From the IMG/VR virus record IMGVR_UViG_3300035156_000206, positions 124,001 through 188,000 of that record: a stretch of 64,000 nucleotides of DNA; one strand, 5' to 3'. Shown here in pieces: positions 3,897-62,977 of this stretch. The number at the start of each line of letters is the position of its first letter. Position 1 is the first letter of the stretch. A model generated the notes under the pieces. The model saw only the letters and a program-made list of their open reading frames with translations, made no database searches and had not been told where the DNA came from. Made by a program: the position numbers and the translations under genes.

Positions 3897-3905
3897 CCTG
3901 TTCCT

Positions 3906-5030: not shown

Positions 5031-5115
5031 TGGGTGAATCTCCTTAGTATAACTGTTTACTTAATTTCAATTCCACATTACGATATGGGAATAATTAATC
5101 TTTTTGGACACCATC

Positions 5116-6466: not shown

Positions 6467-6699
6467 TAACGTTTCATTTCTAGTTGGCGAGTAACGCTGG
6501 TTGACAACTGGCGCAACATCCCGTGGAATGTTACTGGATCGACTTTGATCTTGCCACAGTTGAAGTCCTTTATGACCTCATCTGGTACACTACTGAAGAT
6601 GAAGGTACCTCTACGGCCCTCCACCTCAATCGACTCCATCAAAAATCCCTGCAGCTTCAAGCATGCTGCAAGGACGATGTCAGTAGTTCTATATTGCAT
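6466..6699 (-). CDS. Hypothetical protein (DUF5659-like)
   Basis: YRTTDIVLAACLKLQGF pattern; AAGGAG RBS. Confidence 0.55.
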   Translation of the reverse strand: MQYRTTDIVLAACLKLQGFLMESIEVEGRRGTFIFSSVPDEVIKDFNCGKIKVDPVTFHGMLRQLSTSVTRQLEMKR

Positions 6700-6709
6700 A
6701 TCATGCTCC

Positions 6710-7204
6710 TTAGATCACTTGAATAGACAGCGATTCAATGATCGTCGCCCCAACAGAGTCTTCCCCGTTGTCTTGTTGCTCAAATGCCAATCGGCTCATA
6801 TTTTCAGAATCAAACCCTTGTTCATCGAATGCTGTCATATCCCAGCCCATTGAGTGCAAGTTGGCATACGTGAGGATTTCCTCGGACAGATTCATGTCAA
6901 TGAACATCTGCAGTTGTTCCGATATTGCTGTCAGAATGCGACTTGGTGATGCAGCATCGGAGAAGTGCGGATAATCCCATTGGTCCGCATCATACGGTCC
7001 AGTATCCCATCCCACTCCTGGAACAACGAAGAACTTATTCGAGTCAGTGGTCATCTCGATGTAGATCTCGTACCGCTCATTGATCGTTGCCCTTACAGGC
7101 TCGGTGTACACATACTCAAGGATAACCTCGTACACCTTGGTGTGGTACGGCTTTACCACACCAACGTATTCAATCAGACTTGCTAGTGGATCACGTTTAC
7201 TCAT
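6710..7204 (-). CDS. Baseplate-associated structural protein
   Basis: KPYHTK motif and GWDxxxxD repeats; overlaps the end of the giant wedge gene. Confidence 0.6.
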   Translation of the reverse strand: MSKRDPLASLIEYVGVVKPYHTKVYEVILEYVYTEPVRATINERYEIYIEMTTDSNKFFVVPGVGWDTGPYDADQWDYPHFSDAASPSRILTAISEQLQMFIDMNLSEEILTYANLHSMGWDMTAFDEQGFDSENMSRLAFEQQDNGEDSVGATIIESLSIQVI

Positions 7205-14963: not shown

Positions 14964-14997
14964 ATGATTCCTTTGTGTATGAGGTACTAATCCATAA

Positions 14998-15005
14998 TAT
15001 TTATA
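14998..15005 (-). promoter_or_regulatory. Late promoter TATAAATA inside a 14-bp inverted repeat
   Basis: Exact consensus on the minus strand; repeat arms at 14987-15000 and 15008-15021. Confidence 0.8.
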
Positions 15006-15046
15006 GCATATTATGGATTAGCCAAAAACAGAATCAAATCAAGCAG

Positions 15047-18000: not shown

Positions 18001-18142
18001 TGAAGCTCTCAGGGAAGTACAGCTTGAGGTAGTCTACGATCGACTGCTTGATCGATGTGTAATCGAATGCTGTGAAGTTGATTTGGTTAAATGCCTCGTA
18101 GGCCTTTTCCCATGCTTCTGCGCGTGATACTAAACGTGCCAT
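15047..18142 (-). CDS. Baseplate wedge subunit (T4 gp6-like)
   Basis: Motifs DYTSIK...FNDFIESS, LAKLISY, VVFGDG, EDIEHIR...TQNRMV..DY. Confidence 0.9.
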   Translation of the reverse strand: MARLVSRAEAWEKAYEAFNQINFTAFDYTSIKQSIVDYLKLYFPESFNDFIESSEFIAMIEIFAYLGELLIYRVDVSSHENFIGVAQRKQNVLRLAKLISYRATRNIPARGLLKITSLTTSEDLYDTRGTPLKGKQVSWNDTNNLLWKEQFLTIMNSATLSNIGTVNPGDRVQVDNVLFELYSLNNVPTQRSVLPYAVSVDGTSYPMEIVPVRVDRYGPTERRPENGGGMTLLYGSDGFGNDSPTTGFFFFTKQGTLSSTRSTFDGKTPNQYIDIPTSNINDTDLWVNNIDITSEQILNDGSIRTKRSGEWEEVDTTSAQNVIFSYTNGRNRFETETLDNDQVRVVFGDGEFANIPAGTFDFWYRTSANENLSIPLNAVIDKAFSLRYIDKLGQPQTLQFTVSLISNLQNASASEDIEHIRRVAPSVYYTQNRMVNGADYNLYPLKDPTILKLRTVNRTYAGESKYSRWHDTSETYENVKLAGDDMIVMFENYTDAVRVTDPVDTDKLFTNYIIPTLSAAGTYTRAFINRVQNIRRTFTADEMLQISTVLQNNVWPDPVYIIYNATTGVYSASTAGTSDYVMLIDATMNGGNVIGWTVSNAATKMTIESPTTRFWAANGSAIVAEDTLTAERDKIILLKANTNKYDQADTNTSNESRIRTLSTAVTMVPSGVVYDELSGLQNINKLEVVAYDAVQSELSGTGLVGELIDPDYTISVAASGSVPVDITLPFAYVRGMNEISVSGVGTSWVESPGVALGDLTTTVRLSARPASGLITVTRTSFVYHQRVSASAPWKFVTTTGTVRTLQALEELAGVSAQDRKYRRTRGRSGLNFMWMHQTSMFHLVDPSPTNINDAFVIQKGYYNNLQTWLEGNGAQPLPPTPMQLRNDYKDLLVNAMISDTVVFHPGKIKLVIGDKAAPQLQAKFLVVKNPRSVLTDSQIKLKVRDVVRSFFDITYWEFGESFYFTELSAVIHKELASDINSVVLVPLYPNHFFGDMFQVNMSEDEIIQADVDIDDVEITTALNAVNTNQAR

Positions 18143-18154
18143 GTGATATCTCTC

Positions 18155-18538
18155 TTATAATTGGGCATCGAATTCGAGGTGTAGGTCAAAGCGATCGACC
18201 ACATTCAACTCGATATACTGCAGAACGGCCGATGCAATGATACCGTTCAATTCGGGTACAGCAAACACATTCAGCTCGATCAGGGTAACACGTGGGTCAT
18301 AGTTGAAGACGTACTCCAACTGTTGACGCACTTCCTGGACGGTCTTTTCGTCTAGCTGCTCGAATAATAGATCTGGGATAGAAGTACCAAAGTTTGACAT
18401 CATCACGCGTTCACCACGTCTGGTATAGATGTGGTTCAGCAAGTCGCGTTTCACAACATCAATGTCAGCAAGTCTGAACGATTGTTTGTTGGAAAGGTAA
18501 CTGGCAGTTGAAAACCCACGGTATAAAGATAAAGCCAT
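18155..18538 (-). CDS. Baseplate wedge subunit gp25-like
   Basis: Motifs TRRGERVMMSNFGT, LLFE, YDPRV. Confidence 0.9.
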   Translation of the reverse strand: MALSLYRGFSTASYLSNKQSFRLADIDVVKRDLLNHIYTRRGERVMMSNFGTSIPDLLFEQLDEKTVQEVRQQLEYVFNYDPRVTLIELNVFAVPELNGIIASAVLQYIELNVVDRFDLHLEFDAQL

Positions 18539-18580
18539 TACTTACTCCTTGTAATGGCTTTATTTATCCTCATTGGCAGA

Positions 18581-19921
18581 TCACCGTCTCCAGTGCTTTC
18601 CACGCGGTATGGAAGTTCCACGTTCTGAAGTCCCAACTGCTGGATCATCATATGGAAATTCTGGTTCATGTGTTGTGTCATCCTTTGTCATCACTCGCGC
18701 GAATGGCTCGTGAGATGGTAGACGGTTTGTGAGCTTTGCTTCTTCTGGTGATGCAGATGCTGCAGCCTGTCCATTCATGTGGATCTGTGATCCTGTCTGT
18801 AGAATATTGCCTGACGCTTTCAAACTCAGCGCTGCACCACTTTGCACATTAACAGCAGCCTCTGCTTTAACCTCGAGCCCTGCATCAGTCTTGATGTTGA
18901 TATTGTCAGTTGCTTGGATGCTAACTTCAGCCTTGGACACCATGTGGATACCTTTGTCGGCGTACATACGAATAGTCTCACCAGCTGTGAAGTTGATGTC
19001 TGTCTCAGCACGGACGGATACACGCTTGCCGTACATATCGATGTTGCCATCATAATCCATCTCTACCCAGTTGTCTCCTTTGGGAGTGCTGATGTAGATA
19101 CGCTCATTCGTGTCATCCATCAAGATCTGGGCACCTGAAGTTGTTCGAACACGGACGCGGCAGTTCTCAGGTCTGTCATCCATCGAGAAGCTATGAAAGC
19201 CTGGTGTAGTCCACGAGTACACTGAACTATCATCACCAGCTTCACCATTCTGGTTTACAGCATAGCCATTCTTCACATCAAACGTTTTACCGTCATTTGA
19301 GGTAAATGGTGTTAATTGGGTTTCGTCAGCCTTGTCGCTCGGGGAAGTATCAACGTGCTCAGCCGTATTGCCTGTTGCCGAATAGTCAGCACCACGAGTG
19401 CGCCATTCGTACCCATTGGCATCCTTGAATGCCTTTTGCATATTGCTGTAGAGCGGCTCGATCGGGTCTTCGTACGAATCGAATGGTCCATCGGGTGTAC
19501 CACTTTTGCCTTTGTAGAAGAAGCGACCATGTGGCAGTGAGCTTACGGCACCTTGGTCGAATACACATCCGAGCCACACACGGTAGTAAGGATCTCCATC
19601 GACACAACAAACAAGAACGGTTGCTCCACGCTTGGGGATACCCCACAGCCCATACGCAACCGGTCCTTTTGATGAGAGGCCTACACTAGGACCACGCTTG
19701 AAATCTGAATTGACCATTCCACCAAGTGGTGAGACGTAGGTAGCCCAAGGTAAATTTTCACCTTGTAAGTCATCTGGGTTGTCGCCCAGCGTAGGACACA
19801 GAATCTTCAAACGACCCATCTGATGAGGATCGTTTGTTGCCATCACGGTACCAAGTGTTATGGAATCCATAGTTGTTTGCTTACCAACTTGTGAATTCCT
19901 GTTATTGAACTGTTTACCCAT
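18581..19921 (-). CDS. Baseplate hub/central spike (gp5/VgrG-like, no lysozyme domain)
   Basis: DPHQMGRLKI and LPWA OB-fold motifs; beta-helix repeats toward the C-terminus. Confidence 0.85.
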   Translation of the reverse strand: MGKQFNNRNSQVGKQTTMDSITLGTVMATNDPHQMGRLKILCPTLGDNPDDLQGENLPWATYVSPLGGMVNSDFKRGPSVGLSSKGPVAYGLWGIPKRGATVLVCCVDGDPYYRVWLGCVFDQGAVSSLPHGRFFYKGKSGTPDGPFDSYEDPIEPLYSNMQKAFKDANGYEWRTRGADYSATGNTAEHVDTSPSDKADETQLTPFTSNDGKTFDVKNGYAVNQNGEAGDDSSVYSWTTPGFHSFSMDDRPENCRVRVRTTSGAQILMDDTNERIYISTPKGDNWVEMDYDGNIDMYGKRVSVRAETDINFTAGETIRMYADKGIHMVSKAEVSIQATDNINIKTDAGLEVKAEAAVNVQSGAALSLKASGNILQTGSQIHMNGQAAASASPEEAKLTNRLPSHEPFARVMTKDDTTHEPEFPYDDPAVGTSERGTSIPRGKHWRR

Positions 19922-22411
19922 TTATACTCTCAGGTGGATGAATTTACGTGCTGCAGGGATCGGGTTCAGTGAAGAGTCGATGTTGAAACTACAGTGAACC
20001 CAACTTGCGGAAGCACTAGTCTCACTGATAACTTGTCTAAAGTCAAGGCCTGAACTCTTCAAGGCGTTGAAAATCTTCTCTGGCGATCCGTATGCTGGGC
20101 AGATAAAGTCAACTGCTACGCCTTGCATGTGGTCACTCGTCTTCGAGCTACCTTTGGTTCCAGCGTTGTATGCAGCACAACGGAATCCACTGGTGATGGT
20201 GATGCTGTGACCTAACAGCGACTGCACGTCTTCCAGCTTCTTAGCTAATGCACACAAGTTGTTCATGATGCGATCTGTCAGGTGAGGAATATTCACTTCG
20301 CGACGAATCAGTTGCTCCAACGTGAATGACTTGCTCAAGAAGGTACGACGAGCCGAAGCCATTGTGATTGGTTGCTTACGCACACTCTGACAATTCAGTA
20401 GTTCTTGTGGAGACAGTGGTGTTGAATTTACGCCCATTTTGGCTTTCTGCTCTGCAGTAACGACAGGAGCTGCTTTTGTAGATTTGTCTACCTTTTTCTC
20501 TGCCTTTTGGTTTCCATCCGGTACACCTGAAGGTGATGAGGTAGATGGTTGTGTATCACGACGAGCTGGTGGAGCCCCGGCACCGGTTGGTGTTACCATC
20601 TCTTCCGTTAATATCGTGATCAGGTCTAACTCTTGATCGAACTTGCCGTCACGGAATACACTCTTGATGGAGATGATCTGGAAGAAGCCTGTGTACCAGA
20701 ACTCCTCAGTGAAATCCTTCTGACCAGCAACGAATTCATTATCGCGGGCAGGCATACGCACATTGACCTTGATCAACGGGATCGTTTCCTTCAGTGCTGT
20801 ACCATTTGGGCTGGACACTTCAAGAGCAGTTGGACTAAATGCCTCTAGCAGCCATGGAATACCTACAATGCGCATCTTCGAGTTGATTGCTTCGATTGCT
20901 GCTTGTCGTGCCATAAACGTACGGAAGTCAGCCGTCTTTGCAGGCTCACGTTTGTTACGCGATGCAGGATCTTGAATCGTGCCAGAGTTTCCAACAATCG
21001 AGTACTTACGCATCACGGTGTTGTCTGTATTCAGAATAGTACCAGCTCCGCTACCTAACGTAGTGATATCACCAGAAGCTCCATGGAAATCACCTGGGAA
21101 GTTGTTTGATGATCCGAATGTCTGGAAGAATGCCTGACCGAGCAACATCTTCATATCGTACTCTAGGATCTCGATGTTCGCACCCGTAAAGATGTAGTCG
21201 AACTCAATCACATAACGATGATCCACATTTGGCAAAATCATCTTGCCTTCATTGTTGCGGTTGTCTTTAATGCTGACTGGTACCTTACATGCCTTGACAA
21301 TGTACGTCACAATAGCGGCATCAATGGTGGTGTCAAGCACTGAGTCAATCTTGAAGATTGTCTTGTATCCTTTGTCAACGTCACGGTTCATGATCTCTGT
21401 GACCTTGGTCGTGCTCATTAGCACGTCCGTGATAGCAGACTCAATGTCGATTCCAATTGGCGTTGCCATCTGAGCTTGGCCGCCACCACCTTGGTTACGA
21501 GTGTTGATATTATCGAGTGGCAGGTTAGCGTACTCATCAGCACACGAGATCACATATTTGATCTGACGACCAATTGGGCTATACTTCGAAGGATCATCAC
21601 TTGCACCCTTATTGGTATTGTTGCGTTCATCCAATTGCTTGATCAGTTCCTTGTATGATTTCTCTGCGTTCTCATTCAATGTCGTTTCAAGTGATGTTAA
21701 CGCTTCCTGCACGGTTCCACCCCTAGCATTCGATTGCTCGAGCTTGGCAAATACTGGAAGGCGAGGAGTGCCGTTGATATGGCCTACAAACTCCATCTGA
21801 TACGTTGACCCAGCAGCTGTAAACTCTCCCGTGATGTCCATCATCAGGAATTGGAATGGGCGCGTCTCTAACAATTGTTGGATATGTGGCTCACCGTCGT
21901 GTCCGTCTGTGTAACCCACAAAAATGGTCTTCAACACAAATGTCAGCCCATTTGGTTCAGATTGCAGAGCATCGCATGCGTGCTTCAGCAGGTTCATGAA
22001 GCGGACGCCTTTTGGTTCCATGATCTCCATCATGCCTTCAACGAAGCTGGCGTGAGGATTGCTGCTGCGAGCAGCAGGGTCAATGATGGTCTCAATTTCC
22101 AGTGCCTGGATCACAAACTCAGCATCCGTCATACCATTGATCAACACCATGTATGCATCTTTGCCGTCTGGCACTCCAGGTGGCTTCTTTGGCATGTACT
22201 TGTCTTCATACGATGCGTGCATCCACGTCTCAATGTCGCTCGACTCCATAGCATAGTTTGCAGCAGCCGTTGTGTTAGCTACCACGAGGATGTGATGGTA
22301 TGAGTACGTGCGGAATTGATGCAACAGGTTCAACTCTTTCTCAACATCAATGATGTCCTGAGGAGTCTTACCGTTGAGGATCCGTTGGTCAGAGTTAAAG
22401 ATTCTTGCCAT
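19922..22411 (-). CDS. Baseplate hub protein with C-terminal M15-family peptidase
   Basis: C-terminal ITSGFRC..YN...SxHxxGxAVD...WVH Zn-peptidase motifs; position before gp5. Confidence 0.75.
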   Translation of the reverse strand: MARIFNSDQRILNGKTPQDIIDVEKELNLLHQFRTYSYHHILVVANTTAAANYAMESSDIETWMHASYEDKYMPKKPPGVPDGKDAYMVLINGMTDAEFVIQALEIETIIDPAARSSNPHASFVEGMMEIMEPKGVRFMNLLKHACDALQSEPNGLTFVLKTIFVGYTDGHDGEPHIQQLLETRPFQFLMMDITGEFTAAGSTYQMEFVGHINGTPRLPVFAKLEQSNARGGTVQEALTSLETTLNENAEKSYKELIKQLDERNNTNKGASDDPSKYSPIGRQIKYVISCADEYANLPLDNINTRNQGGGGQAQMATPIGIDIESAITDVLMSTTKVTEIMNRDVDKGYKTIFKIDSVLDTTIDAAIVTYIVKACKVPVSIKDNRNNEGKMILPNVDHRYVIEFDYIFTGANIEILEYDMKMLLGQAFFQTFGSSNNFPGDFHGASGDITTLGSGAGTILNTDNTVMRKYSIVGNSGTIQDPASRNKREPAKTADFRTFMARQAAIEAINSKMRIVGIPWLLEAFSPTALEVSSPNGTALKETIPLIKVNVRMPARDNEFVAGQKDFTEEFWYTGFFQIISIKSVFRDGKFDQELDLITILTEEMVTPTGAGAPPARRDTQPSTSSPSGVPDGNQKAEKKVDKSTKAAPVVTAEQKAKMGVNSTPLSPQELLNCQSVRKQPITMASARRTFLSKSFTLEQLIRREVNIPHLTDRIMNNLCALAKKLEDVQSLLGHSITITSGFRCAAYNAGTKGSSKTSDHMQGVAVDFICPAYGSPEKIFNALKSSGLDFRQVISETSASASWVHCSFNIDSSLNPIPAARKFIHLRV

Positions 22412-24393: not shown

Positions 24394-25014
24394 ATGGCAC
24401 GACCTAAAAAAGTAGTAACAATCGATGAAGTCATTCAAGATGCACCAAACATGGATGATCTGTATGAAGTTGATCCAGAGCAGTTCCTAGCTGCAGCAGT
24501 GCATGGAGATGCAATCGATCCTGAGCTGGCTACTCTGTTGGACGATGAGCCTGAAGTTGAAGAGCCGGTGGTCGAAGAAGAGGTGATGAAGCCAATTAAG
24601 GCCAAGCGCGTCAAGAACTACATCAACAACGCCGACTTGCTGGTACAGTTAGCGATCAGCAATGCAAATGGTGAGATGAGCAAGGAACTGGTCAAAATGT
24701 TCCAGACCCTGTGTGACCGTTACGGCGCCAAGGCAAACTTTGGTGGCTACTCGTACATCGACGATATGAAGGCATATGCAATGTACATGCTCGTGCGCAC
24801 ATGGAAGGCTTTCAAGTGCGAGAAAAGCCAGAACCCATTTGCTTTCTTCACCCAGTGCATCAAGCACAGTTTCATCCAGTGTCTCAACAAGGAACGCAAC
24901 GAGCGTGACATTCGGGACCAGCTACTGATTGATGCTGGTCTGAATCCTTCCTACTCCTTTGGAGGTGGTGATTCAGATAGCTCTGGTGGCGGTGGTGAAG
25001 ACAGCTACGATTGA
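24394..25014 (+). CDS. Late-transcription sigma factor (T4 gp55-like)
   Basis: NYINNADLL, NFGGYSYIDDM, SQNPFAFFTQCIKHSFIQCLNKE; adjacent to gp47/gp46 as in T4. Confidence 0.9.
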   Translation: MARPKKVVTIDEVIQDAPNMDDLYEVDPEQFLAAAVHGDAIDPELATLLDDEPEVEEPVVEEEVMKPIKAKRVKNYINNADLLVQLAISNANGEMSKELVKMFQTLCDRYGAKANFGGYSYIDDMKAYAMYMLVRTWKAFKCEKSQNPFAFFTQCIKHSFIQCLNKERNERDIRDQLLIDAGLNPSYSFGGGDSDSSGGGGEDSYD

Positions 25015-25016: not shown

Positions 25017-25040
25017 AAAAGCCCTACGGGGCTTTTTCTT
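25017..25040 (+). terminator. Rho-independent terminator
   Basis: aaaagccc-TACG-gggcttttt. Confidence 0.75.
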
Positions 25041-25077
25041 CGTTTGGATCCAATAAATAGCAGATCTAGGAGATGCT

Positions 25078-25555: not shown

Positions 25556-25584
25556 TTGACATCGGTTGTGTTCTAGTCTAGGAT
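25556..25584 (+). promoter_or_regulatory. Sigma70-type promoter for gp47/gp46
   Basis: TTGACA-17 bp-TAGGAT. Confidence 0.7.
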
Positions 25585-25618: not shown

Positions 25619-26719
25619 ATGATCCTAAACAATACACATCCCGAAACAGTTGCTTTGTTCAAGAAATTGAAGAAGGCTGCTGCATTCACTGATATCCACT
25701 TCGGCAAGAAGGGAAACTCAGATCAACACAATCAAGACTGCTTGGATTCTATCACCTGGTTCTGTGAACAGGTGCGTAAGGATCCAACGATCGATCACAT
25801 AGTTGTACCAGGTGACTGGCATGAACTGCGTTCGTCACTCAGCATCAACACGATGGATTACTCTCTCCGTGGTGCTGAACTATTAAGCACTCTCGGTATC
25901 CCAATCATCATCACTATCGGCAACCACGATCTGTTTCACCGTGATAGCCGTACGATGTATTCCACTATCATGTTCAAGCACATCCCCAACATCTATCTGG
26001 TGCCTGAGCCAGTAGTGATGGAGTTGAAGCACGGTCCAACATTGTTTGCACCATTCCTGTTCTCTGATGAGTACCCAGGTCTGGTGAAGCATGCAGCTGT
26101 GCCAGTATGGTGGGGACACTTTGAGTTTAAAGGCTTCGTCATCAGTGGATACAACACGAAGATGGAACACGGTCCAGAACATGGCGACTTCAGTGGACCA
26201 AAGCGGATCTTCAGTGGCCACTTTCACAAGCGCCAAATTCAAGACAACATCGTCTATATCGGCAATGCCTTCCCTATGGATTTCTCTGATGCTGGAGACT
26301 TTGCACGGGGCATGGCAGTGTATGACTACAAACACGATGAGCTGGAGTTTATTGACTGGCCAGGCTGTCCGAAGTACGTTAAGGCAAAGCTGTCACAATT
26401 CCTTGACGAGACCGCTGCCATCCCTGCGAACTCACGTGTGCGTTGCATCATTGATGTGCCGCTGACGTACGAAGAGAGCATTATCATCAAGCAGACATTC
26501 CTGGTTCAGTATGAACTTCGTGAGCTGCGCCTTGAAGAGTCAGATGAGTTGACAGACGTCCTAACCAACACCGAGACAGGGGAGATCATGGAGAACCCAG
26601 AAGGCCGATTGAATACTGTCGATGAGCTGGTTGTTCAGATGCTTGGTGCAATCGACACTCCTAAGATTGATCAGGCCATGCTTGTCAATCTGTACCAAAA
26701 ATTACAATCGGAGGGATGA
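25619..26719 (+). CDS. Recombination nuclease, Mre11/SbcD-like (T4 gp47)
   Basis: Motifs TDIHFG, GDW, GNHD, GHFE, SGHFH, YIGN. Confidence 0.92.
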   Translation: MILNNTHPETVALFKKLKKAAAFTDIHFGKKGNSDQHNQDCLDSITWFCEQVRKDPTIDHIVVPGDWHELRSSLSINTMDYSLRGAELLSTLGIPIIITIGNHDLFHRDSRTMYSTIMFKHIPNIYLVPEPVVMELKHGPTLFAPFLFSDEYPGLVKHAAVPVWWGHFEFKGFVISGYNTKMEHGPEHGDFSGPKRIFSGHFHKRQIQDNIVYIGNAFPMDFSDAGDFARGMAVYDYKHDELEFIDWPGCPKYVKAKLSQFLDETAAIPANSRVRCIIDVPLTYEESIIIKQTFLVQYELRELRLEESDELTDVLTNTETGEIMENPEGRLNTVDELVVQMLGAIDTPKIDQAMLVNLYQKLQSEG

Positions 26720-26720
26720 T

Positions 26721-26897
26721 ATGACATTTGATGACTATGTAGCGGCCGTGGATGTTTGGGTGCTGGAAGTGTTCACCACAGGATTGGACCATGACGATCT
26801 GGAGTACGTTATGGCTATGATGGATATTAAGATGTTACCCGAGTCGTGTGCTGCGGAAGTTGTTAAACAAAGAATGAAAGAGTGTGAAGATGATTGA
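26721..26897 (+). CDS. Small acidic hypothetical protein
   Basis: GGAGGG RBS; fills the gap between gp47 and gp46. Confidence 0.6.
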   Translation: MTFDDYVAAVDVWVLEVFTTGLDHDDLEYVMAMMDIKMLPESCAAEVVKQRMKECEDD

Positions 26898-29394
26898 TAG
26901 TACCGATATGTTAGAATTACTGGAGCTGCGCATGCGCAACTTCCTATCGTATGGCAACAACTATACGATCATCGACCTGACGACACCTGGCACCACTCTG
27001 ATCGTGGGAGAAGACTTGGATAGTGGTACCGGGTCAGCAAACGGTGTTGGTAAGACGACCATCCTCAATGGCATCGTCTATGGCTTATATGATAAGCCAC
27101 TGTCGAAAGAGATCAAGCTCGACCACCTGATCAACAACATCAACAAGAAGAATATGGAAGTGTCTCTGACCTTCCGCAAGCATGGTGATACATTTGTTGT
27201 TACGCGCTTCCGCAAGGGCAAGGACGGCAACACTGTCATCCTGACCAAGAATGGTACCGCTATCACGCGTGACAGCGTAGACCAGACTAACAAGTTCATC
27301 GAGACGGTGATTGGTTACTCATACGACCTGTTCGTCCGCATTGTTGTGTTCTCTGCAGGACACGATGCATTCTTAGACTTGCCTACGTCTGGGGCAAAGA
27401 AGCCTCTTCAATCAGACATCATGGAAGAGCTGTTCGACTTAACGTCACTGACGGAAAAGGCCGAGCGCGCCAAGAAAGAGATCAAGGCCAATGAGCAGCG
27501 CATGGAAGTTATCAAGGCTCAGATTGAACAGATCGAGCGTGAAGCTGAACGCCACGCTGCACAGATTGCAACCACACGCCGGCTAATCGGTGAATGGGAT
27601 GTTACACAGACAGGTAAGATTGCTCGACTCAAGGCTGAACTGGCTACTCTGGAAGGGATCGACTTCGAGAAGGAGCAACGACTCCACAAAGAGTTAGAGG
27701 CAAAGAAGCCGGCTCGCAAGGCATTGTGGGATGCGCGTGATCGTGCAGTCACGTGGGAAGCTTCTCACCAGATGAAGACGCTGCGTGTGATGAAGGATCT
27801 CAAGAAGCTTGATGGGATTGACTTCGACGCACAGTTGGAACTGCATCGTCAGTTGAAGCATGCCACGCAGCGCCACAAAGAGTTAGCCAGCACCTTCAAG
27901 CAGTACTCCAGCTTTGAAGAGACCAATAGTCTCAAGCTGTCATCTCTGGCCAAAGAAATCCAATCAATGGCCGATGTGGACTTTGATGCTGAGAAGGCTA
28001 TCTTTACCCATTTGGCCGATAAGCAAGCATCTCTGAAGACCCTCAACACAGAGTTAGAAGAGATCGTCAGGGTCAAGGGTGAGAACTTAGTCACCTATGA
28101 AAAACTGAACACAGAGTCGAAGCACCTGTTCGATGCTACCTGTCCGTACTGTTTGCAGAACTTTGCAGGTGCTAAGGAGAAGGGTGAGAAGATTGGTGAT
28201 CAGCTAACTGAGCTGCAGGGTGGTCTCAAGAAGCACGACAGTAAGATCACAAAGACCAATAAGGCAATCTCTGCACTGGCTGAAGAGATTGAGGCACTCA
28301 AAGGTAAGGCGATCGTTAAGTCCTTGGCGGATCTGGTCAAGATGCAATCTGATAAAGAGTCACTGGATTGTCGTTATGCTGATGCAAGTGATGCAGTCAA
28401 TCCTCATGCGGTAGCCCTGCAAGAGCTGATGCAATCGGACAAAATTGAATCTGACCAAGTTGAGTTGGACATTGCAGAACTTGCTACAAAGATCAAGGCC
28501 CGTAAGGACTGCATTACTGTGGATGACGCTGATGAGCTCGCTCAGATGAAATCAGATAGCGTCTCATTGAAGGCTCGCTTGGAGGAGCTGACGGAGGAAG
28601 CTAATCCGTACCTCAAGGAGATCAATGCACTTGGTGTGAAGATCAAAGCGACCGATGACATCTTGGAGGTATGTGATCCAATCATTAATCGACTGACCAG
28701 TGAGATCAAGGACATCGAGGATCAGATTACAGTGGATGACATTGAGGACTTGTTGGAGACAAAGAACAACAGTGCCACAATGGAAGCCAGGATCAAGGAG
28801 ATGTCAACAGAGGCCAATCCATACGAGACTACTTTGGCGGAGTTGGAAGCGGTTGAGTTGGATGAGGCAAAGTATGATTTCATCAACGAGATGACTAAGG
28901 TAGTGGATCACCACAAGTTCCTGGTCAAGCTGTTGACAAAATCTGACAGCTTTGTTCGGAAACAACTGATCGCTGAGAATATTCCGTTCCTAAATAAACA
29001 ACTGCGTGAGAATCTGAAGGACTTAGGATTGCCACACCGTGTAGAGTTTACTGATACCATGTCAGCATCGATCTCGCAGTTGGGTCGTCCTTTAGAGTTT
29101 GGTAACCTGTCTCGTGGTCAGAAGGCACGTGTGAACTTGGCACTAGCTTGGGCATTCCACGATGTTCTACAAAGCATGCACGGGCCCGTCAATTTCTGTT
29201 TACTTGATGAGGTGCTTGATGTAGGATTGTGTTCAGTAGGAGTCATTATGGCTGCGAAGATGTTGAAGAACAGAGCGAAGCGTGACAAGTTGACGATGTT
29301 CATCATCTCACACAAGCAGGAAGTGGACAGTATCTTCGATCGTACAATGAAGATTCAGTTGCACAAGGGCTTCTCCAAGATTGCTACAGAGTAA
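26884..29394 (+). CDS. Recombination ATPase, Rad50/SbcC-like (T4 gp46)
   Basis: NFLSYGN, Walker A NGVGKT, CPYC zinc hook, LSRGQ signature, LLDEVLD, ISH. Confidence 0.93.
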   Translation: MKMIDSTDMLELLELRMRNFLSYGNNYTIIDLTTPGTTLIVGEDLDSGTGSANGVGKTTILNGIVYGLYDKPLSKEIKLDHLINNINKKNMEVSLTFRKHGDTFVVTRFRKGKDGNTVILTKNGTAITRDSVDQTNKFIETVIGYSYDLFVRIVVFSAGHDAFLDLPTSGAKKPLQSDIMEELFDLTSLTEKAERAKKEIKANEQRMEVIKAQIEQIEREAERHAAQIATTRRLIGEWDVTQTGKIARLKAELATLEGIDFEKEQRLHKELEAKKPARKALWDARDRAVTWEASHQMKTLRVMKDLKKLDGIDFDAQLELHRQLKHATQRHKELASTFKQYSSFEETNSLKLSSLAKEIQSMADVDFDAEKAIFTHLADKQASLKTLNTELEEIVRVKGENLVTYEKLNTESKHLFDATCPYCLQNFAGAKEKGEKIGDQLTELQGGLKKHDSKITKTNKAISALAEEIEALKGKAIVKSLADLVKMQSDKESLDCRYADASDAVNPHAVALQELMQSDKIESDQVELDIAELATKIKARKDCITVDDADELAQMKSDSVSLKARLEELTEEANPYLKEINALGVKIKATDDILEVCDPIINRLTSEIKDIEDQITVDDIEDLLETKNNSATMEARIKEMSTEANPYETTLAELEAVELDEAKYDFINEMTKVVDHHKFLVKLLTKSDSFVRKQLIAENIPFLNKQLRENLKDLGLPHRVEFTDTMSASISQLGRPLEFGNLSRGQKARVNLALAWAFHDVLQSMHGPVNFCLLDEVLDVGLCSVGVIMAAKMLKNRAKRDKLTMFIISHKQEVDSIFDRTMKIQLHKGFSKIATE

Positions 29395-29438: not shown

Positions 29439-29771
29439 ATGACAATGGATCAATCGATGTGGGAAGACGTGCATGAACCGTCCGAGGAAGAGATAGCAAC
29501 AGGAAGACGCCTCCAGGCCGAGGCAAAGGCGAGATGGGATGCATTAACGCCAGAGCAGAAAGCCAAGAAGGAAGAGGAGCGGCAAGCACGATTTCGCGCG
29601 CATTCAGAATTTTATGAACGTTTGGGTTTGAGGTTGATTGTGCCTACAACTATACCTCAAACTGAGCTCATTGTCCAACCAATGGTCGAACCTCAAGGAT
29701 TGGTGTTCGCAATGCGAGCACGATACAATTGGGAGATCCAAAAAGGCGAAACTGATGAAAAACCAGTTTGA
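29439..29771 (+). CDS. Small protein carrying a major-capsid Gol-region-like segment
   Basis: AGGAGG RBS; C-terminal LRLIVPTTIPQTELIVQPMVEPQGLVFAMRARY aligns with the major capsid protein. Confidence 0.7.
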   Translation: MTMDQSMWEDVHEPSEEEIATGRRLQAEAKARWDALTPEQKAKKEEERQARFRAHSEFYERLGLRLIVPTTIPQTELIVQPMVEPQGLVFAMRARYNWEIQKGETDEKPV

Positions 29772-30374: not shown

Positions 30375-30445
30375 TCCTAAGCATGTGATATTCCTTTGGT
30401 ATTTGCGGGCCTTAAATAGCCTCAATACCAATACAGGAGTATCAC

Positions 30446-30931
30446 ATGATTATCTTAGGCATCGATCAATCTTACACCAGCTCAGGTTTAGTTGTTGTGG
30501 ACGGCGATAAATTGTTGTACAGTGGCGTCTTTAAGACGCCCAAGGACATGGACATCTTCGAACGCGCTTGGCGCATCGGTGAACATGTACTAGAAAAGAT
30601 AGAAGAATTCGGTGTCGAGGCGGTTGCGATTGAAGGTCTTGCTTTTGGTATGACTGGAAACGCTACGCGAGACCTAGCAGGACTACAGTTTGTGATTGTA
30701 TCGAAGATCCAGTTTGTTGCTGGAAAGCTCGTTGCTGTCATATCACCAAAGTCTCTGAAAGTGTTCGCGACGGCTAATGGTAAGGCAACGAAGAAAGAGA
30801 TGATTGCTGCAGTACCCGAGGATGTAAATTCTATTTTCAAGGGTCAGGGGTATAAACTAACGACAGGTCTTGCTGACTTATCGGATGCTTATTTCCTGGC
30901 GCAATATATCAAGAAGCAGGATACAAATTAA
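30446..30931 (+). CDS. ruvC: RuvC-like Holliday junction resolvase
   Basis: ILGIDQS, AIEG, NGKATK, DLSDAY catalytic motifs; AGGAG RBS; late promoter. Confidence 0.88.
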   Translation: MIILGIDQSYTSSGLVVVDGDKLLYSGVFKTPKDMDIFERAWRIGEHVLEKIEEFGVEAVAIEGLAFGMTGNATRDLAGLQFVIVSKIQFVAGKLVAVISPKSLKVFATANGKATKKEMIAAVPEDVNSIFKGQGYKLTTGLADLSDAYFLAQYIKKQDTN

Positions 30932-30940
30932 GTTGCGAGA

Positions 30941-31192
30941 TGTTGACCCGTGTAGTGCGGGTGAAAACCTTCGGGTATGACATTGTGGACGCAATACGAA
31001 TGATGGATGTGCGCAACATCCGGTACTAGCTCGTATTGTGGGTCCCACTAAATTGGTTATGCAACCGCGAGCGTAGGGATACAAGCAGCGCGAGACCATA
31101 TCCATCTAGCCACTCCTGCGAGTGATAGTTAAACATCTCCTGACCATTGGGGTATGACAGTATGCCTGTCCGGCCCGCACCCACGGTCGATA
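30941..31192 (+). ncRNA. Putative structured non-coding RNA of unknown class
   Basis: Long-range stem 30941-30962/31173-31192; ACC-UUCG-GGU tetraloop; nested stems GCAATACGA/TCGTATTGT, GGATGT/ACATCC, CACTC/GAGTG, GACAG/CTGTC; several G-U pairs; no credible ORF. Confidence 0.55.
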
Positions 31193-31243
31193 GGGGGATT
31201 GTTTCATTGTTTGAATTAATTGATAGTCGGCAATCAAGATAGA

Positions 31244-31434
31244 TTAACTGATCGAATATCTGAGGACGAACGCAGTGAGGACGAAGATGGAGATCAGATG
31301 AGGCGAAGCCGAGTTAAATGATTCAACCGGTTCTTTTGCAGCTAGCTGGATTATGTGTCTGTCGTTACACTCCAGACTTAATATAGATGATTGTGAAACT
31401 CGCTACGCTCGCCATCACAATCATCTATATTAAG
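31244..31434. repeat. ssDNA-type hairpin cluster with a 20-bp perfect inverted repeat (31377-31396/31415-31434)
   Basis: GNA-triloop hairpins closed by tandem GA/GA pairs on both strands; arms CTTAATATAGATGATTGTGA / TCACAATCATCTATATTAAG. Confidence 0.75.
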
Positions 31435-32350: not shown

Positions 32351-32394
32351 TTGGATTATCCTTGTGTGCATCCTATTTATGGTACAGACAAAAG

Positions 32395-32424
32395 AAAAGG
32401 AAGGTTGTTTCCAACCTTCCTTTT
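32395..32424. terminator. Terminator hairpin
   Basis: aaaaggaaggttg-tttc-caaccttcctttt. Confidence 0.7.
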
Positions 32425-36587: not shown

Positions 36588-38282
36588 ATGACAAAATGGA
36601 CTGGCTATTTTAAGGTTGTTCAACCAACAACCGATACAACAACCGTTACCGATAACCAGGCAATGGATGGTACCGAGTATGGAAACTACTCGTGGTATCA
36701 ACGTCTGGTACAAGGTTCGGCATCACGGATCAGCCGCTACAGCGAATATGATGTGATGGATAGCGACGTTGAAGTCGCTCGTGCTTTGGATATCATTGCA
36801 GAGGAGATGACTTCCAACAACGAGAAGACCGACTTGCCAATCAACATCGATGTCCAAGCAGAAGACATCGAACACATGGCTCCAACCACTTTGATGACTC
36901 TCCGTGCCGCTTTGCGCTACTGGAGTTCTGTTCACGACTGGGAAAATCGTCTGTTCAAGATTGCTCGCACTACTGCAAAGTATGGCGACTGCTTCTTCCG
37001 TCGTGGCAAAGATCCTCGTGCTAAGTGGACCTTCATTCATCCGAAGATGGTTGTTGGTGCTGTAGTCGATGAGCAAGATGTTACCAAGATTCTCGCATAC
37101 CAAATCAAAGTCGATATCAACCGTCCTGTGTCAAGCGCTGGACAGATCCCTGTTGGTCAGCAGTATGACAGTGAGATCGTTCCTGCACACGAAATCGTTC
37201 GGTTCTCGCTGAACGATGACATGTCGTCCGTTGCACCTTTCGGTGAATCGATTCTGTCGCCTGTGTATCGTGCACACAAACAAAAAGAGATGCTGGAAGA
37301 CGCGATCATCATTTACCGTACGGTACGTGCTCCTGAACGGCGCGTATTCTACATTGACGTGGGCAAGATGCCACCAGCAATGACCAAGAAGTACCTCGAG
37401 CAAATCAAAAATGAGATTCGGCAGCGTAAGATCCCATCCGCCAATGGTGGACAAACAAACGTCGACTCGGTCTATAATGCCCAATCAATGTCAGAAGACT
37501 TCTACTTCGCACAACGTGCTGACGGTAAAGGTAGTCGTGTAGAGACTCTCCCTGGTGGAGCTGGTCTTGGTGAATTGGCTGACTTGGATCACTTCCTCAA
37601 CAAAGTCTTCCGCGGTCTTCGTATTCCTATCTCTTGGATGAATGAAGCAAACGGTGGTGGTGCAATCTTCAATGATGGCAAGACTGGCCAAGCGTACATC
37701 CAAGAGATTATCTTCGGTAAGTATGTTGCTCGTCTGCAAGGGTACATTGACCGTGTGCTGGATGTTGAATTTAAGAAGTACCTTCGTGACAACCGCATTG
37801 TGGTTGATGAGAGTATGTACAAGCTGCGTTTGCCAGAGTCGACCAACTTTGCAAAGCTGCGCCAAGCTGAAGTAGATGGACAGATGTTGGCTACCTATGC
37901 AAGTGCATCGGAGATCCCACACATGTCGAAGCGTTATGGCTTAGAGCGTTATGCTCAGTGGTCTGAGGATGAGATCCTGGCAAATGAGAAGAAGGTCATG
38001 GAAGAGCGTGGCATCCCAGCTGACGCACCAAACCGCATGCAATTGATCTACGGTGATCCAAATACTACACCAGCGGACTTCTCATTGCCAGGTGGCGGTG
38101 GAGCAATGGGTGGTGGCGGAGCGATGCCTTTAGGTGCTGGTGAAGGTACCGGAGATCCATTAGATCCAGGTGCAGATGCTGACGGCAAAGACACATCGAC
38201 TACTGATTTAGCAGACAAACAAACCACGCGTGATGCGCCGGCTCCTGGCGCAAAACCAGGTGGGGTTGGCGGTAAGCCATAA
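36588..38282 (+). CDS. Portal vertex protein (T4 gp20-like)
   Basis: EDAIIIYRTVRAPERRVFYIDVGKMP, EDFYF, VETLPGG. Confidence 0.95.
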   Translation: MTKWTGYFKVVQPTTDTTTVTDNQAMDGTEYGNYSWYQRLVQGSASRISRYSEYDVMDSDVEVARALDIIAEEMTSNNEKTDLPINIDVQAEDIEHMAPTTLMTLRAALRYWSSVHDWENRLFKIARTTAKYGDCFFRRGKDPRAKWTFIHPKMVVGAVVDEQDVTKILAYQIKVDINRPVSSAGQIPVGQQYDSEIVPAHEIVRFSLNDDMSSVAPFGESILSPVYRAHKQKEMLEDAIIIYRTVRAPERRVFYIDVGKMPPAMTKKYLEQIKNEIRQRKIPSANGGQTNVDSVYNAQSMSEDFYFAQRADGKGSRVETLPGGAGLGELADLDHFLNKVFRGLRIPISWMNEANGGGAIFNDGKTGQAYIQEIIFGKYVARLQGYIDRVLDVEFKKYLRDNRIVVDESMYKLRLPESTNFAKLRQAEVDGQMLATYASASEIPHMSKRYGLERYAQWSEDEILANEKKVMEERGIPADAPNRMQLIYGDPNTTPADFSLPGGGGAMGGGGAMPLGAGEGTGDPLDPGADADGKDTSTTDLADKQTTRDAPAPGAKPGGVGGKP

Positions 38283-40489: not shown

Positions 40490-41815
40490 ATGGACTTACA
40501 AACAAAATGGGCAGAAGAAAAAGTTGCCTTGCTGGAAGGCCTGGAAGGCAAACAACGCGAGACCGTTGGACAGGTTCTGGAAAATCAACGCAATTACGTT
40601 CTGAACGAAACAGCAGCTGAAGGTTCGACCTCAGCAAGCAACATCGCTGGTTTCCGTAAGATCATGATTCCAATGATTCGTCGTATTATCCCTGGCACTA
40701 TTGCTCAGGAACTCGTTGGTGTTCAGCCAATGGAAGGCCCAGTTGGCCTGGTTTACTCGCTGCGCTTTAAGTACGCCGAGTCAGTTACTACTTCGACTTC
40801 GCCAAACGGTGACATCGTTGCTGGTGACGAAATCTGGGGTAACGCAAACCCAATCCGTCGTTTCTATTCGAGCGGCACTGGCGTAGCACAAGTTGCTGGC
40901 GCTGGCGGTATGGGTGCACCTGCACCAGGCGCAATCACTGGAACAGCAAACGGTAACGCATGGGGTTCGACCCTGGACGCGGCTGCTGGTTGTACAGTTG
41001 GTGGTGCTGGTTCGTTCCTGGAAGGTTCAGGCGGTCGTAAGTCGAGCTTCGAGATCGTTTCGCAAGCTGTTGAAGCTGGTACGCGTAAGCTGCAAACTGG
41101 TTGGACTATCGAAGCAATGCAAGATGCTAAGAACCAACACGGTATCGACATCGAGTCAGAAATGACCAAAACGATCTCTGCACAAATCGTGCAAGAAATC
41201 GACAACGAAATCATCACGGACTTGACAGCTCTGGCTGGCACCGTAGCAACATGGGACGGTGCTCTGCCATCAGCTCCAGGCTACTACCGTCCAACATTCA
41301 TCGGCGATCGCTTCGCGAACCTCGGTGTGATGATCTCGTACGTTGCGAATGAAATCGCTCGTAAGACCCGTCGTGGTCCAGGTAACTTCATCGTTGTTTC
41401 GCCAATGATGTTGACCGTTCTGCAACAGGCTGTTAAGTCCCAGTTCGCACCAGCAGTTCGTGGTTCGTTCAAAGGCCCTAACAACACCCAATTGGTTGGT
41501 ACCCTCAACGGTACAATCAAGGTCTACAGCTACCTGTGGAACCAAACACAATCGACCGACGTTGGTGGTACAGGCGACGACACGATTCTGGTTGGCTACA
41601 AAGGCGGTGACGGTGAATCGGACGCAGGTTACTTCTACTGCCCATACATCCCACTGATGAGCTCAGGCGTTATCACTAACCCTGTGACCTTCCAGCCAGT
41701 CGTATCGCTGATGACTCGTTACGGTAAGACATACTTTACCAACCCAACGACTTCGCTCGGCAACTCGGCTGACTACTACGGTAAGATCAACGTCACTAAC
41801 CTGTCGTTCGCTTAA
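40490..41815 (+). CDS. Major capsid protein (T4 gp23-like)
   Basis: IRRIIPGTIAQELVGVQPM, RKLQTGWTIEAMQD, EIDNEII, GYFYCPYIPL, MTRYG. Confidence 0.97.
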   Translation: MDLQTKWAEEKVALLEGLEGKQRETVGQVLENQRNYVLNETAAEGSTSASNIAGFRKIMIPMIRRIIPGTIAQELVGVQPMEGPVGLVYSLRFKYAESVTTSTSPNGDIVAGDEIWGNANPIRRFYSSGTGVAQVAGAGGMGAPAPGAITGTANGNAWGSTLDAAAGCTVGGAGSFLEGSGGRKSSFEIVSQAVEAGTRKLQTGWTIEAMQDAKNQHGIDIESEMTKTISAQIVQEIDNEIITDLTALAGTVATWDGALPSAPGYYRPTFIGDRFANLGVMISYVANEIARKTRRGPGNFIVVSPMMLTVLQQAVKSQFAPAVRGSFKGPNNTQLVGTLNGTIKVYSYLWNQTQSTDVGGTGDDTILVGYKGGDGESDAGYFYCPYIPLMSSGVITNPVTFQPVVSLMTRYGKTYFTNPTTSLGNSADYYGKINVTNLSFA

Positions 41816-60808: not shown

Positions 60809-60816
60809 TATAAATA
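60809..60816 (+). promoter_or_regulatory. Late promoter TATAAATA
   Basis: Exact consensus upstream of TerL. Confidence 0.8.
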
Positions 60817-60842
60817 ACCTTACAATATATTATGAGGTTATC

Positions 60843-62921: not shown

Positions 62922-62977
62922 CAAGTTGTTCCCTAGATGGGTCACACTAAATACAGTGATCTATTTAGGGAACACTA

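What the first reader, a model, noticed from the sequence alone, without database searches (positions are those of the whole stretch)
30382..30448. Recurrent late-promoter-in-a-hairpin translational gate (type example: ruvC)
Seen: CATGTGATATTCCT-TTGGTATT..GGC pairs with GCC..AATACCAA..AGGAGTATCACATG, burying the RBS and AUG, with TAAATA (30413-30418) in the loop. The same design appears at 62927-62974, 18529-18566, 14987-15021 and 60814-60841, and more loosely at 2943-3035, 25039-25072 and 32358-32397. Established: T4 uses this device for a few genes (e, soc, 49, I-TevI), where read-through early mRNA is silenced and the late transcript lacks the 5' arm. Inference: this phage uses it systematically. 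Its use on ruvC parallels T4 resolvase gene 49 despite the unrelated nuclease fold.
Basis: partly seen in the sequence, partly recalled or inferred. Interest (0 to 1): 0.65.

Follow-up and report, generated by a model that had tools for sequence, protein, structure and literature searches.

The report
Late-promoter hairpin gating ruvC translation
A T4-like giant phage hides the ribosome-binding site of its RuvC resolvase gene in a long RNA hairpin whose loop carries the late promoter; this is the known T4 timing trick, kept in all 12 relatives examined, so it is a well-supported new example rather than a new mechanism.

Summary
Window 30382-30448 folds into a 26-pair hairpin (-38.6 kcal/mol, z -7.8). 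TAAATA (30413-30418) is unpaired in the apical loop, and the AGGAG and AUG of ruvC lie in the 3' arm.

- **The promoter reading holds.** The 292-kb genome is a T4-like jumbo myovirus with a gp55-type late sigma gene. TAAATA is 12-fold enriched 22-34 nt upstream of genes.
- **The hairpin is conserved.** All 12 syntenic metagenomic relatives (RuvC 57-80% identical) keep the architecture with different stem sequences. Native folds average -29.8 kcal/mol and arm-swapped chimeras -14.7. There are 36 G·U pairs against 2 A/C mismatches, which points to a sense-strand RNA.
- **Gating is gene-specific.** ruvC is strongly gated in every relative. The capsid, scaffold-position, hub and protease genes are not gated in any.
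- **It is recurrent, not systematic.** 15 of 45 TAAATA genes are gated. T4 gives the same fraction, 10 of 30, in the same pipeline, which recovers e, 49, I-TevI, I-TevII and segB. Operon-internal genes score 3%.
- **It is not late-specific.** Sigma70-like early promoters show the same pattern, 13 of 33.

No RNA data exist, so transcription start sites and differential translation remain inferred.

Verdict: new member of a known kind.

The parts
30382..30448 (+). ruvC gate hairpin. 5' arm 30382-30403, apical stem 30407-30410 with 30419-30422, 3' arm 30424-30448.
   Evidence: MFE -38.6 kcal/mol, z -7.8. Conserved in 12 of 12 relatives with covariation.
30413..30418 (+). TAAATA, the -10 element of a gp55-type late promoter, unpaired in the apical loop. 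The late start site is inferred at about 30424.
   Evidence: It forms the only fully invariant block in the alignment of the 12 upstream regions. The motif is 12-fold enriched upstream of genes. The start site is placed by analogy with T4 and was not measured.
30435..30439 (+). Shine-Dalgarno AGGAG of ruvC, paired with UUCCU of the 5' arm.
   Evidence: the SD region is paired to the 5' arm at 7-9 of 9 positions in all 12 orthologues.
30446..30931 (+). ruvC, a RuvC-family Holliday junction resolvase of 161 aa. Its AUG lies in the stem.
   Evidence: phrog_159 E 6.7e-32. Pfam PF02075 scores 28.1 bits against a cut-off of 22.2.
24394..25014 (+). gp55-like late sigma factor gene.
   Evidence: T4 gp55 matches at E 1.8e-4. 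phrog_12791 E 3.7e-23 and phrog_234 E 2.1e-20.
25556..25584 (+). Sigma70-like promoter candidate, TTGACA-17-TAGGAT, upstream of sbcD. It is the likely source of read-through transcripts.
   Evidence: TTGAC-like boxes occur upstream of sbcD in several relatives, and none carries TAAATA there.
25619..29394 (+). sbcD (25619-26719) and sbcC (26890-29394). These are non-late genes upstream of ruvC on the same strand.
   Evidence: phrog_100 and phrog_77. No plus-strand terminator-like site lies between them and ruvC.
60809..60841 (+). TerL gate. TATAAATA 60809-60816 overlaps the 5' arm 60814-60822, and the 3' arm 60833-60841 holds GAGG. A terminator-like hairpin with a T-run lies upstream at about 60771-60807.
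   Evidence: ddG 9.0. Conserved in L099 with ddG 10.6. Analogous arm and SD pairings occur in L029, L034 and L035.
62924..62976 (+). Gate of the 1299-aa collagen-repeat protein gene, whose ATG is at 62978. TAAATA 62948-62953 is in the loop and AGGGAA is in the 3' arm.
   Evidence: ddG 16.4. Collagen repeat from Pfam.
18529..18566 (-). Gate of the gp25-like baseplate wedge gene (18155-18538). TAAATA 18561-18566 abuts the 5' arm, AAGGAG is in the loop and the AUG is in the 3' arm.
   Evidence: ddG 11.6. The L015 orthologue scores 5.9. PF04965.
14965..15036 (-). Two-level structure before the 2588-aa gene (7197-14963). The inner hairpin 14986-15026 carries TATAAATA 14998-15005. An outer helix, 15030-15036 and 15023-15026 pairing with 14965-14975, masks the SD.
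   Evidence: ddG 6.4.

Best explanation
The hairpin at 30382-30448 is a cis-acting RNA switch of the T4 type.

- Transcripts that start upstream contain both arms. They most likely come from the sigma70-type promoter before sbcD-sbcC.
- On those transcripts about 26 base pairs bury the AGGAG and the AUG of ruvC, so ribosomes cannot initiate.
- Late in infection, RNA polymerase carrying the phage's gp55-like sigma starts at the TAAATA in the apical loop.
- That late transcript begins in the 3' arm, at about 30424. It lacks the whole 5' arm and has an open RBS.

RuvC resolvase is therefore made only from its own late promoter. The likely benefit is that branched replication and recombination intermediates are not cut before packaging.

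The same geometry recurs at about a third of this phage's promoter-proximal genes.

**Shown:** the structure, its conservation and covariation, the promoter motif and its position, the sigma gene, and the gene order.

**Inferred:** the start sites, the read-through, and the translational effect.
For: **Structure.**
- MFE -38.6 kcal/mol, z -7.8.
- The computed cost of opening the RBS is 21.1 kcal/mol on the long form and 1.9 on the form that starts 5 nt after TAAATA.

**Conservation.**
- All 12 syntenic orthologues keep TAAATA unpaired in the apical loop and the SD paired to the 5' arm, with z -3.6 to -7.7.
- Native folds average -29.8 kcal/mol and arm-swapped chimeras -14.7.
- 22 positions of the 3' arm are paired in at least 8 of 12 sequences. 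They show a mean of 3.4 pair types, and 20 have both-side changes.

**RNA on the sense strand.**
- 36 of 278 pairs are G·U, against 2 A/C mismatches.
- The sense strand is more stable than the antisense strand in 9 of 12 sequences, Wilcoxon p 0.007.

**Gene specificity.**
- ddG is 7.7-28.1 for ruvC in all 12 relatives.
- ddG is about 0-5 for the capsid, scaffold-position, hub and protease genes.

**Promoter.**
- TAAATA lies upstream of 49 genes where 4 are expected, usually 22-34 nt from the ATG, and at the same genes in relatives.
- A gp55-like sigma gene is present.

**Context.**
- sbcD and sbcC lack TAAATA in all relatives.
- A sigma70-like promoter candidate lies at 25556-25584, and no plus-strand terminator-like site lies before ruvC.
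- Gated sites are 14 of 34 where the upstream gene is co-directional and 1 of 11 where it is divergent, p 0.07.

**Positive control.**
- The same metric recovers T4 e (14.9), I-TevII (13.1), 49 (12.6), I-TevI (12.3), segB (11.5) and 26 (10.9).
- Those genes are described as this mechanism in PMC3014915 and PMC2988022.
Against: - There is no transcript data. The only public run holding this DNA is a biocrust metagenome DNA run, so neither the late start site nor read-through from sbcCD is observed.
- The late character of TAAATA rests on analogy with T4 and on which genes carry the motif.
- The trend with co-directional context is not significant (p 0.07).
- 17% of genes with no recognised promoter motif but an upstream gap of at least 40 nt also reach ddG 6 or more. 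RBS-masking hairpins are therefore not unique to TAAATA genes.
- A stem of 22-28 pairs could also be an RNase III substrate.
Confidence: 0.75

Rival explanations
1. The long stem is mainly an RNase III processing or mRNA-stability element. It would cut the ruvC message from the sbcCD transcript or protect an RNA end, and RBS masking would be incidental.
For: The stems are 20-28 nearly continuous pairs in all orthologues, which is the length range of RNase III substrates (my own knowledge). Stable hairpins also occur at other intergenic sites in this genome.
Against: - In 12 of 12 orthologues the 3' arm is specifically the SD and AUG segment, and the loop is specifically the promoter. A processing site would not need either.
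- The two roles are compatible with each other.
Confidence: 0.1
2. The inverted repeat acts in DNA. It would be either a cruciform or hairpin that presents a single-stranded -10 element to the late polymerase, as in N4 virion-polymerase promoters, or a palindromic operator for a regulator of the late promoter.
For: TAAATA lies exactly at the centre of the dyad in all 12 orthologues. The early-promoter cassettes also carry sequence-conserved inverted repeats that could be operators.
Against: - 36 G·U pairs against 2 A/C mismatches, and a more stable sense strand. These asymmetries are expected for RNA, not for a DNA cruciform.
- Stem sequences are not conserved (arm swap), so a sequence-specific operator is unlikely.
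- Two thirds of TAAATA promoters, including those of the most highly expressed genes, have no dyad.
Confidence: 0.06
3. The hairpin is a transcription terminator or attenuator that ends the sbcCD operon, with the ruvC promoter placed inside it only for compactness.
For: At TerL, gene 25078 and gene 57183, terminator-like hairpins with T-runs do lie immediately upstream of TAAATA.
Against: - No T-run follows the ruvC stem. The stem runs straight into the coding sequence.
- The terminator scan finds nothing there.
Confidence: 0.04

Closest known systems
T4 gene 49 (endonuclease VII) late promoter and RBS hairpin
   Same: - It also controls a Holliday junction resolvase.
- The late-promoter motif (AATAAATA in T4) is embedded in a hairpin that masks the translation initiation region.
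- ddG is 12.6 in the same pipeline.
- The gene lies in a neighbourhood of early and middle nucleotide and recombination genes, with 55, 47 and 46 nearby.
   Different: - The nuclease is unrelated. It is RuvC-family here and endonuclease VII in T4.
- In T4 the promoter lies at the 5' foot of a stem of about 12 pairs. Here it lies in the apical loop of a stem of about 26 pairs, and the computed gate is stronger, at ddG 19 and up to 28 in relatives.
T4 e (lysozyme), soc, I-TevI/II/III and segB, and Aeh1 mobE translational hairpins
   Same: Late genes on long early or middle transcripts have a sequestered RBS, and the late promoter starts inside the structure (PMC3014915 and PMC2988022). The metric used here recovers e, I-TevI, I-TevII and segB.
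   Different: Those cases were demonstrated experimentally in T-even phages. This one is a distant jumbo lineage known only from metagenomes (capsid protein 62-65% identical to Xanthomonas phage XacN1 and similar phages), and the evidence is comparative only.
T4 gene 25 initiation-region stem
   Same: The gp25-like wedge gene here (18155-18538) also has a hairpin in its initiation region. PMC3014915 describes a conserved stem at T-even gene 25.
   Different: Here the SD is in the loop and the AUG in the stem, with TAAATA abutting the 5' arm. From my own recollection, which I did not check here, the T4 stem lies between the SD and the AUG and stimulates translation.

Membership tests
T4-type late-promoter/RBS-hairpin translational gate | A stable stem-loop sequesters the SD and/or AUG on transcripts that start upstream. 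| tested here: met
   RBS opening cost is 21.1 kcal/mol on the long form, and the SD is paired in 12 of 12 orthologues.
T4-type late-promoter/RBS-hairpin translational gate | A gp55-type late promoter (TATAAATA-like -10 element) lies within the structure, upstream of the 3' arm. | tested here: met
   TAAATA is at 30413-30418 in the apical loop. Motif enrichment and spacing are, and gene-by-gene conservation is.
T4-type late-promoter/RBS-hairpin translational gate | The phage encodes the gp55 late sigma. | tested here: met
   Window 24394-25014.
T4-type late-promoter/RBS-hairpin translational gate | The late transcript starts downstream of the 5' arm. | not testable with these tools
   No RNA run exists. 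The result is insensitive to assumed start offsets of 2-11 nt after the motif.
T4-type late-promoter/RBS-hairpin translational gate | The gene is reached by earlier transcripts from upstream. | tested here: inconclusive
   The gene order is co-directional, a sigma70-like site lies before sbcD, and no terminator-like site intervenes. Read-through itself was not observed.
T4-type late-promoter/RBS-hairpin translational gate | Long transcripts are translated poorly and short ones well. | not testable with these tools
   This needs reporter or toeprint experiments.
RuvC family (PF02075) | The profile match is above the curated cut-off. | tested here: met
   28.1 bits against a cut-off of 22.2. phrog_159 E 6.7e-32.
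Intrinsic terminator | A G+C-rich stem is followed by a T-run. | tested here: not met
   No T-run follows 30448, and the scan finds no site there.
Any Rfam family | A covariance-model match at the gathering score. | tested here: not met
   No matches in the window.

The most novel reading that the evidence does not exclude
Promoter-keyed translation may be a genome-wide design rule in this phage rather than only an early/late timer. About a third of the first genes behind both late (TAAATA) and early (sigma70-like) promoters have an RBS that pairs with sequence upstream of their own start site. Each such gene would then be translated only from transcripts started at its own promoter and would be insulated from read-through. 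Some distant relatives may reach the same end with leaderless TerL messages, since TAAATA lies 5-6 nt before the ATG there.
Probability: 0.3. Interest if true: 0.55.

Novelty: new member of a known kind. Interest (0 to 1): 0.4.

Why it matters
- **The trick is old and mobile.** It extends a textbook T4 regulatory device to a distant, uncultured clade of T4-like jumbo phages.
- **The need looks general.** Two unrelated resolvases, endonuclease VII and RuvC, are held under the same gate. That argues that keeping a junction resolvase silent until late is a strong and recurring requirement.
- **It is a clean computational case.** The 12 covarying orthologues define a cis-regulatory RNA family.
- **It has practical use for annotation.** The hairpin with TAAATA in its loop marks late start sites and late-only genes in genomes known only from metagenomes.

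Tried and rejected
**Searches for relatives**
- blastn of the locus against the phage records: no match.
- tblastn with RuvC against the phage records: at most 36% identity, so no useful orthologues.
- RuvC scan of viral contigs: only two distant loci (51% and 34% identity), with no hairpin in front of ruvC.
- TerL scan of viral contigs: nothing.
Only relatives at 61% identity or less came back, and the 83-86% ones were missed.

**Structure methods**
- RNAalifold on a MAFFT alignment of all 12 upstream regions gave no structure, because the arms are out of register.
- A covariance model built from the 5 closest sequences found only some of the distant orthologues, and also matched minus-strand copies and one unrelated site. 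I did not use that alignment for pair counts. I used alignment-free arm-swap and AUG-anchored pair counts instead.
- Counting MFE base pairs that span the motif did not discriminate: 10.0 observed against 8.6 +/- 0.7 in permutations. I replaced it with opening energies.

**Other checks**
- Sequencing runs: one DNA metagenome run only.
- Rfam: no match.
- Crude regex for T4 early promoters: only 6 genes, not informative.

**Not used**
- The large protein representative search, structure prediction and complex prediction were not needed.
- No alternative genetic code was used.

Full report
**Setting.** The window is bases 124001-188000 of a single 291,967-bp virus contig with 48% G+C. The only public run that holds this DNA is a biocrust metagenome. 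It is a T4-like jumbo myovirus. PHROG scans identify these genes:
- gp23-type major head protein, 40490-41815
- portal, 36588-38282
- tail sheath, 55031-57118
- large terminase, 60843-62375
- SbcD, 25619-26719, and SbcC, 26890-29394
- RuvC-like resolvase, 30446-30931, which also passes the Pfam PF02075 cut-off

The closest cultured phages by capsid protein are Xanthomonas phages XacN1 and Xoo-sp13 and Stenotrophomonas phages CM1 and RAS14, at 62-65% identity. I called genes with a simple codon-usage caller, which gave 377 genes.

**The observation.**
- The stretch 30375-30460 folds to -38.6 kcal/mol. Dinucleotide shuffles give -15.9 +/- 2.9, so z is -7.76 and none of 200 shuffles folds as well.
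- The 5' arm (30382-30403) pairs with 30424-30448. That 3' arm contains AGGAG (30435-30439) and the ATG (30446-30448).
- TAAATA (30413-30418) is unpaired in the apical loop.

**TAAATA as a promoter.**
- Between -60 and -8 of start codons, TAAATA is the most enriched hexamer. It occurs before 49 genes where 4.0 are expected.
- It usually sits 22-34 nt before the ATG, and the genes include capsid, protease, sheath-adjacent, terminase and baseplate genes.
- The extended consensus is A-TAAATA followed by a G-poor stretch. This is close to T4's TATAAATA.
- The phage has a gp55-type late sigma gene at 24394-25014. T4 gp55 matches it at E 1.8e-4, and phrog_12791 and phrog_234 match at E 1e-20 to 1e-23.
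- A second enriched motif family is a sigma70-type promoter, GTTGACTT...CAGTATAATGA. It clusters at the two genome ends.

**Comparative evidence at ruvC.** A word-based protein search found RuvC relatives at 57-80% identity. I fetched eleven contigs, and all share the order sbcD-sbcC-(small ORFs)-ruvC.
- Every one has a hairpin of 16-28 pairs in front of ruvC. TAAATA is unpaired in the apical loop, and the SD region is paired to the 5' arm at 7-9 of 9 positions. z-scores run from -3.6 to -7.7.
- The stems differ in sequence. Joining the 5' half of one orthologue to the 3' half of another raises the mean MFE from -29.8 to -14.7 kcal/mol.
- With 3'-arm positions indexed from the AUG, 22 positions are paired in at least 8 of 12 sequences. 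They carry a mean of 3.4 canonical pair types, and 20 show changes on both sides. These columns are not strict homology columns, and each structure is that sequence's own MFE fold.
- 36 of 278 stem pairs are G·U, and only 2 one-by-one mismatches are A/C. The sense strand folds better than the antisense strand in 9 of 12 sequences, with means -29.8 and -23.5 and Wilcoxon p 0.007. This favours a sense-strand RNA over a DNA cruciform.
- TAAATA is the only fully invariant block in the alignment of the upstream regions.

**A quantitative gate score.** For each gene I computed the ensemble free-energy cost of making positions -13 to +4 single-stranded. I did this on a long RNA, with 40-50 nt upstream of the presumed start, and on a short RNA starting 5 nt after TAAATA. 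The score ddG is the difference between the two costs.
- ruvC scores 21.1 on the long form and 1.9 on the short form, so ddG is 19.2, the highest of the 45 TAAATA genes.
- Across the 45 TAAATA genes the mean ddG is 4.34. Swapping upstream halves among sites gives 2.74 +/- 0.37.
- 15 sites reach ddG 6 or more, against 5.5 +/- 1.9 in permutations, with a maximum of 9.
- The count is stable for assumed start offsets of 2-11 nt.

**Gene specificity in relatives.**
- ruvC scores 7.7-28.1 in all 12 sequences.
- The capsid gene scores about 0, the gene before it -0.7 to 2.4, the baseplate hub -1.2 to 3.7 and the prohead protease 1.0 to 5.2.
- Genes that lack TAAATA here also lack it in every relative. 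These include sbcD, sbcC, the portal gene and the sigma gene.
- Gene 25078 is moderately gated (3.3-11.5) and gene 33606 varies (0.2-7.2).

**The other listed sites.**
- 62927-62974: a clear gate, ddG 16.4.
- 60814-60841, before TerL: a clear gate, ddG 9.0.
- 18529-18566: a clear gate on the minus strand, for a gp25-like wedge gene, ddG 11.6.
- 14987-15021: on the minus strand. An inner hairpin carries the promoter and a separate outer helix masks the SD, ddG 6.4.
- 25039-25072 and 2943-3035: weak.
- 32358-32397: a terminator-like hairpin upstream of the promoter, not a gate, ddG 3.0.

Two further checks used an 83%-identical TerL relative, L099.
- The TerL gate is kept there, with ddG 10.6.
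- A gate of the form CCTCCGC..TAAATA..GCGGAGG, which lies outside the window at window-relative 74608, is also kept at L099:12147.
- More distant TerL loci show the same arm and SD pairing with different sequences, in L029, L034 and L035.

**How systematic the device is.**

| Gene class in this phage | Genes with ddG of 6 or more |
|---|---|
| Late, TAAATA | 15 of 45 (33%) |
| Early, sigma70-like | 12 of 31 (39%) |
| No motif, upstream gap under 40 nt (operon-internal) | 4 of 157 (3%) |
| No motif, upstream gap of 40 nt or more | 24 of 143 (17%) |

- Fisher tests of the late and early classes against operon-internal genes give p about 5e-8.
- A separate tally of early promoters gave 13 of 33, against 4.2 +/- 1.2 in permutations.
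- I ran the same pipeline on the T4 genome as a positive control. It returned e 14.9, I-TevII 13.1, gene 49 12.6, I-TevI 12.3, segB 11.5, gene 26 10.9 and gene 51 10.5. Gene names come from the record's annotation.
- Apart from gene 51, these are the genes described as RBS-hairpin cases in PMC3014915 and PMC2988022. Gene 49 does not appear by name in the passages I read, where the list has '39'.
- In T4, 10 of 30 TAAATA genes (33%) reach ddG 6 or more, and 2% of operon-internal genes do.

The device is therefore recurrent here at the same rate as in T4. It is not used more systematically, and it is absent from the abundant structural genes.

**Context for read-through.**
- A sigma70-like site, TTGACA-17-TAGGAT, lies at 25556-25584 before sbcD. 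The scan finds no plus-strand terminator-like site between there and ruvC.
- TTGAC-type boxes occur before sbcD in several relatives.
- Gated TAAATA sites are 14 of 34 where the upstream gene is co-directional and 1 of 11 where it is divergent. The trend fits the model but is not significant (Fisher p 0.07).

**Mechanism.** The best-supported reading is the T4-type gate.
- Transcripts that enter from upstream carry both arms and cannot be translated at ruvC.
- Polymerase with the late sigma starts about 5-7 nt after TAAATA, inside the 3' side of the structure.
- That yields a leader of about 22 nt with a free SD.

The structure, its selection, the motif, the sigma gene and the gene order are shown. 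The start sites, the read-through and the translational effect are inferred.

**Rivals.**
- RNase III processing is compatible with the gate and cannot be excluded.
- A DNA-level cruciform or operator is disfavoured by the G·U asymmetry, by the non-conserved stem sequences, and by its absence from most TAAATA promoters.
- An intrinsic terminator is excluded because no T-run follows the stem.
- No Rfam family matches.

**Comparison and novelty.** This is a new, well-conserved member of a known kind.
- It differs from T4 gene 49 in the nuclease family, in the apical-loop placement of the promoter, and in a longer and stronger stem.
- The point of interest is convergence. Unrelated resolvases sit under the same gate.
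- The genome-wide signal at early promoters suggests a broader rule of insulation from read-through, but that remains untested.

**Limits.**
- There are no RNA data.
- All relatives are metagenomic contigs.
- Gene starts come from my own caller or from tblastn anchoring.
- Energies are model predictions.
- Read laying was not used because no informative run exists.

Noticed in passing
window 30932-31375 (+); L005:1207-1665; L007:10499-10933: The roughly 440 nt just after the ruvC stop codon have no called gene but are about 81% identical at the nucleotide level to two relatives. The indels are not multiples of three. RNAalifold predicts 115 pairs, 14 of them with compensatory changes among only three sequences. 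This is a candidate structured non-coding RNA. It has no Rfam match, and a covariance model of its first 122 nt finds it only in the closest relatives.
   Followed up: partly
G000:C1 about 480-20000 (minus strand) and 252000-291500; outside the window: A sigma70-like early-promoter cassette is repeated more than 20 times..cAG TTGACaTTTTTCCAAAAGTCAGTATAAT GATTACATCAACTGACGAAAGGAG..ATG. Its transcribed leader TCAACTGAC is complementary to GTCAGTTGA over the -35 box. 13 of 33 such genes have a masked RBS on long transcripts. This could be an RNA gate or a palindromic operator.
   Followed up: partly
L020, L021, L024, L025, L033 (TerL starts): In distant TerL relatives, TAAATA or TATAAATA lies only 5-6 nt before the TerL ATG and there is no SD. 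This suggests leaderless late messages, which would be another way to tie translation to the gene's own promoter.
   Followed up: no
Window-relative -2775, -44957, -46682 and -38993 (outside the window): There may be a third promoter class, TGTTCTGTTC followed by a TAnnnT -10-like box. It also sits inside strong RBS-masking hairpins.
   Followed up: no
Window 62978 to window-relative about 74600: About 11.6 kb is absent from the 83%-TerL relative L099, between the 178-aa and 246-aa genes. The segment begins with a gated gene for a 1299-aa collagen-repeat protein. It may be a variable tail-fibre module.
   Followed up: partly
L003:1-2267; proteins P0130, P0140, P0231, P0238: Intein or homing-endonuclease domains (LAGLIDADG_3, Hom_end) are inserted in the SbcC orthologue of one relative and in several TerL homologues.
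   Followed up: no
G000:C1 ends (1-60 and the last 60 bases): The contig starts with a G-rich run and ends in CGTTGG tandem repeats. This may be an assembly edge or a terminal repeat structure.
   Followed up: no
window 29439-29771 (+); L007:9067-9324: Small ORFs between sbcC and ruvC give a weak match to an N-terminal segment of the Gp23 capsid profile. The E-value is 5.5e-4, below the Pfam cut-off.
   Followed up: no
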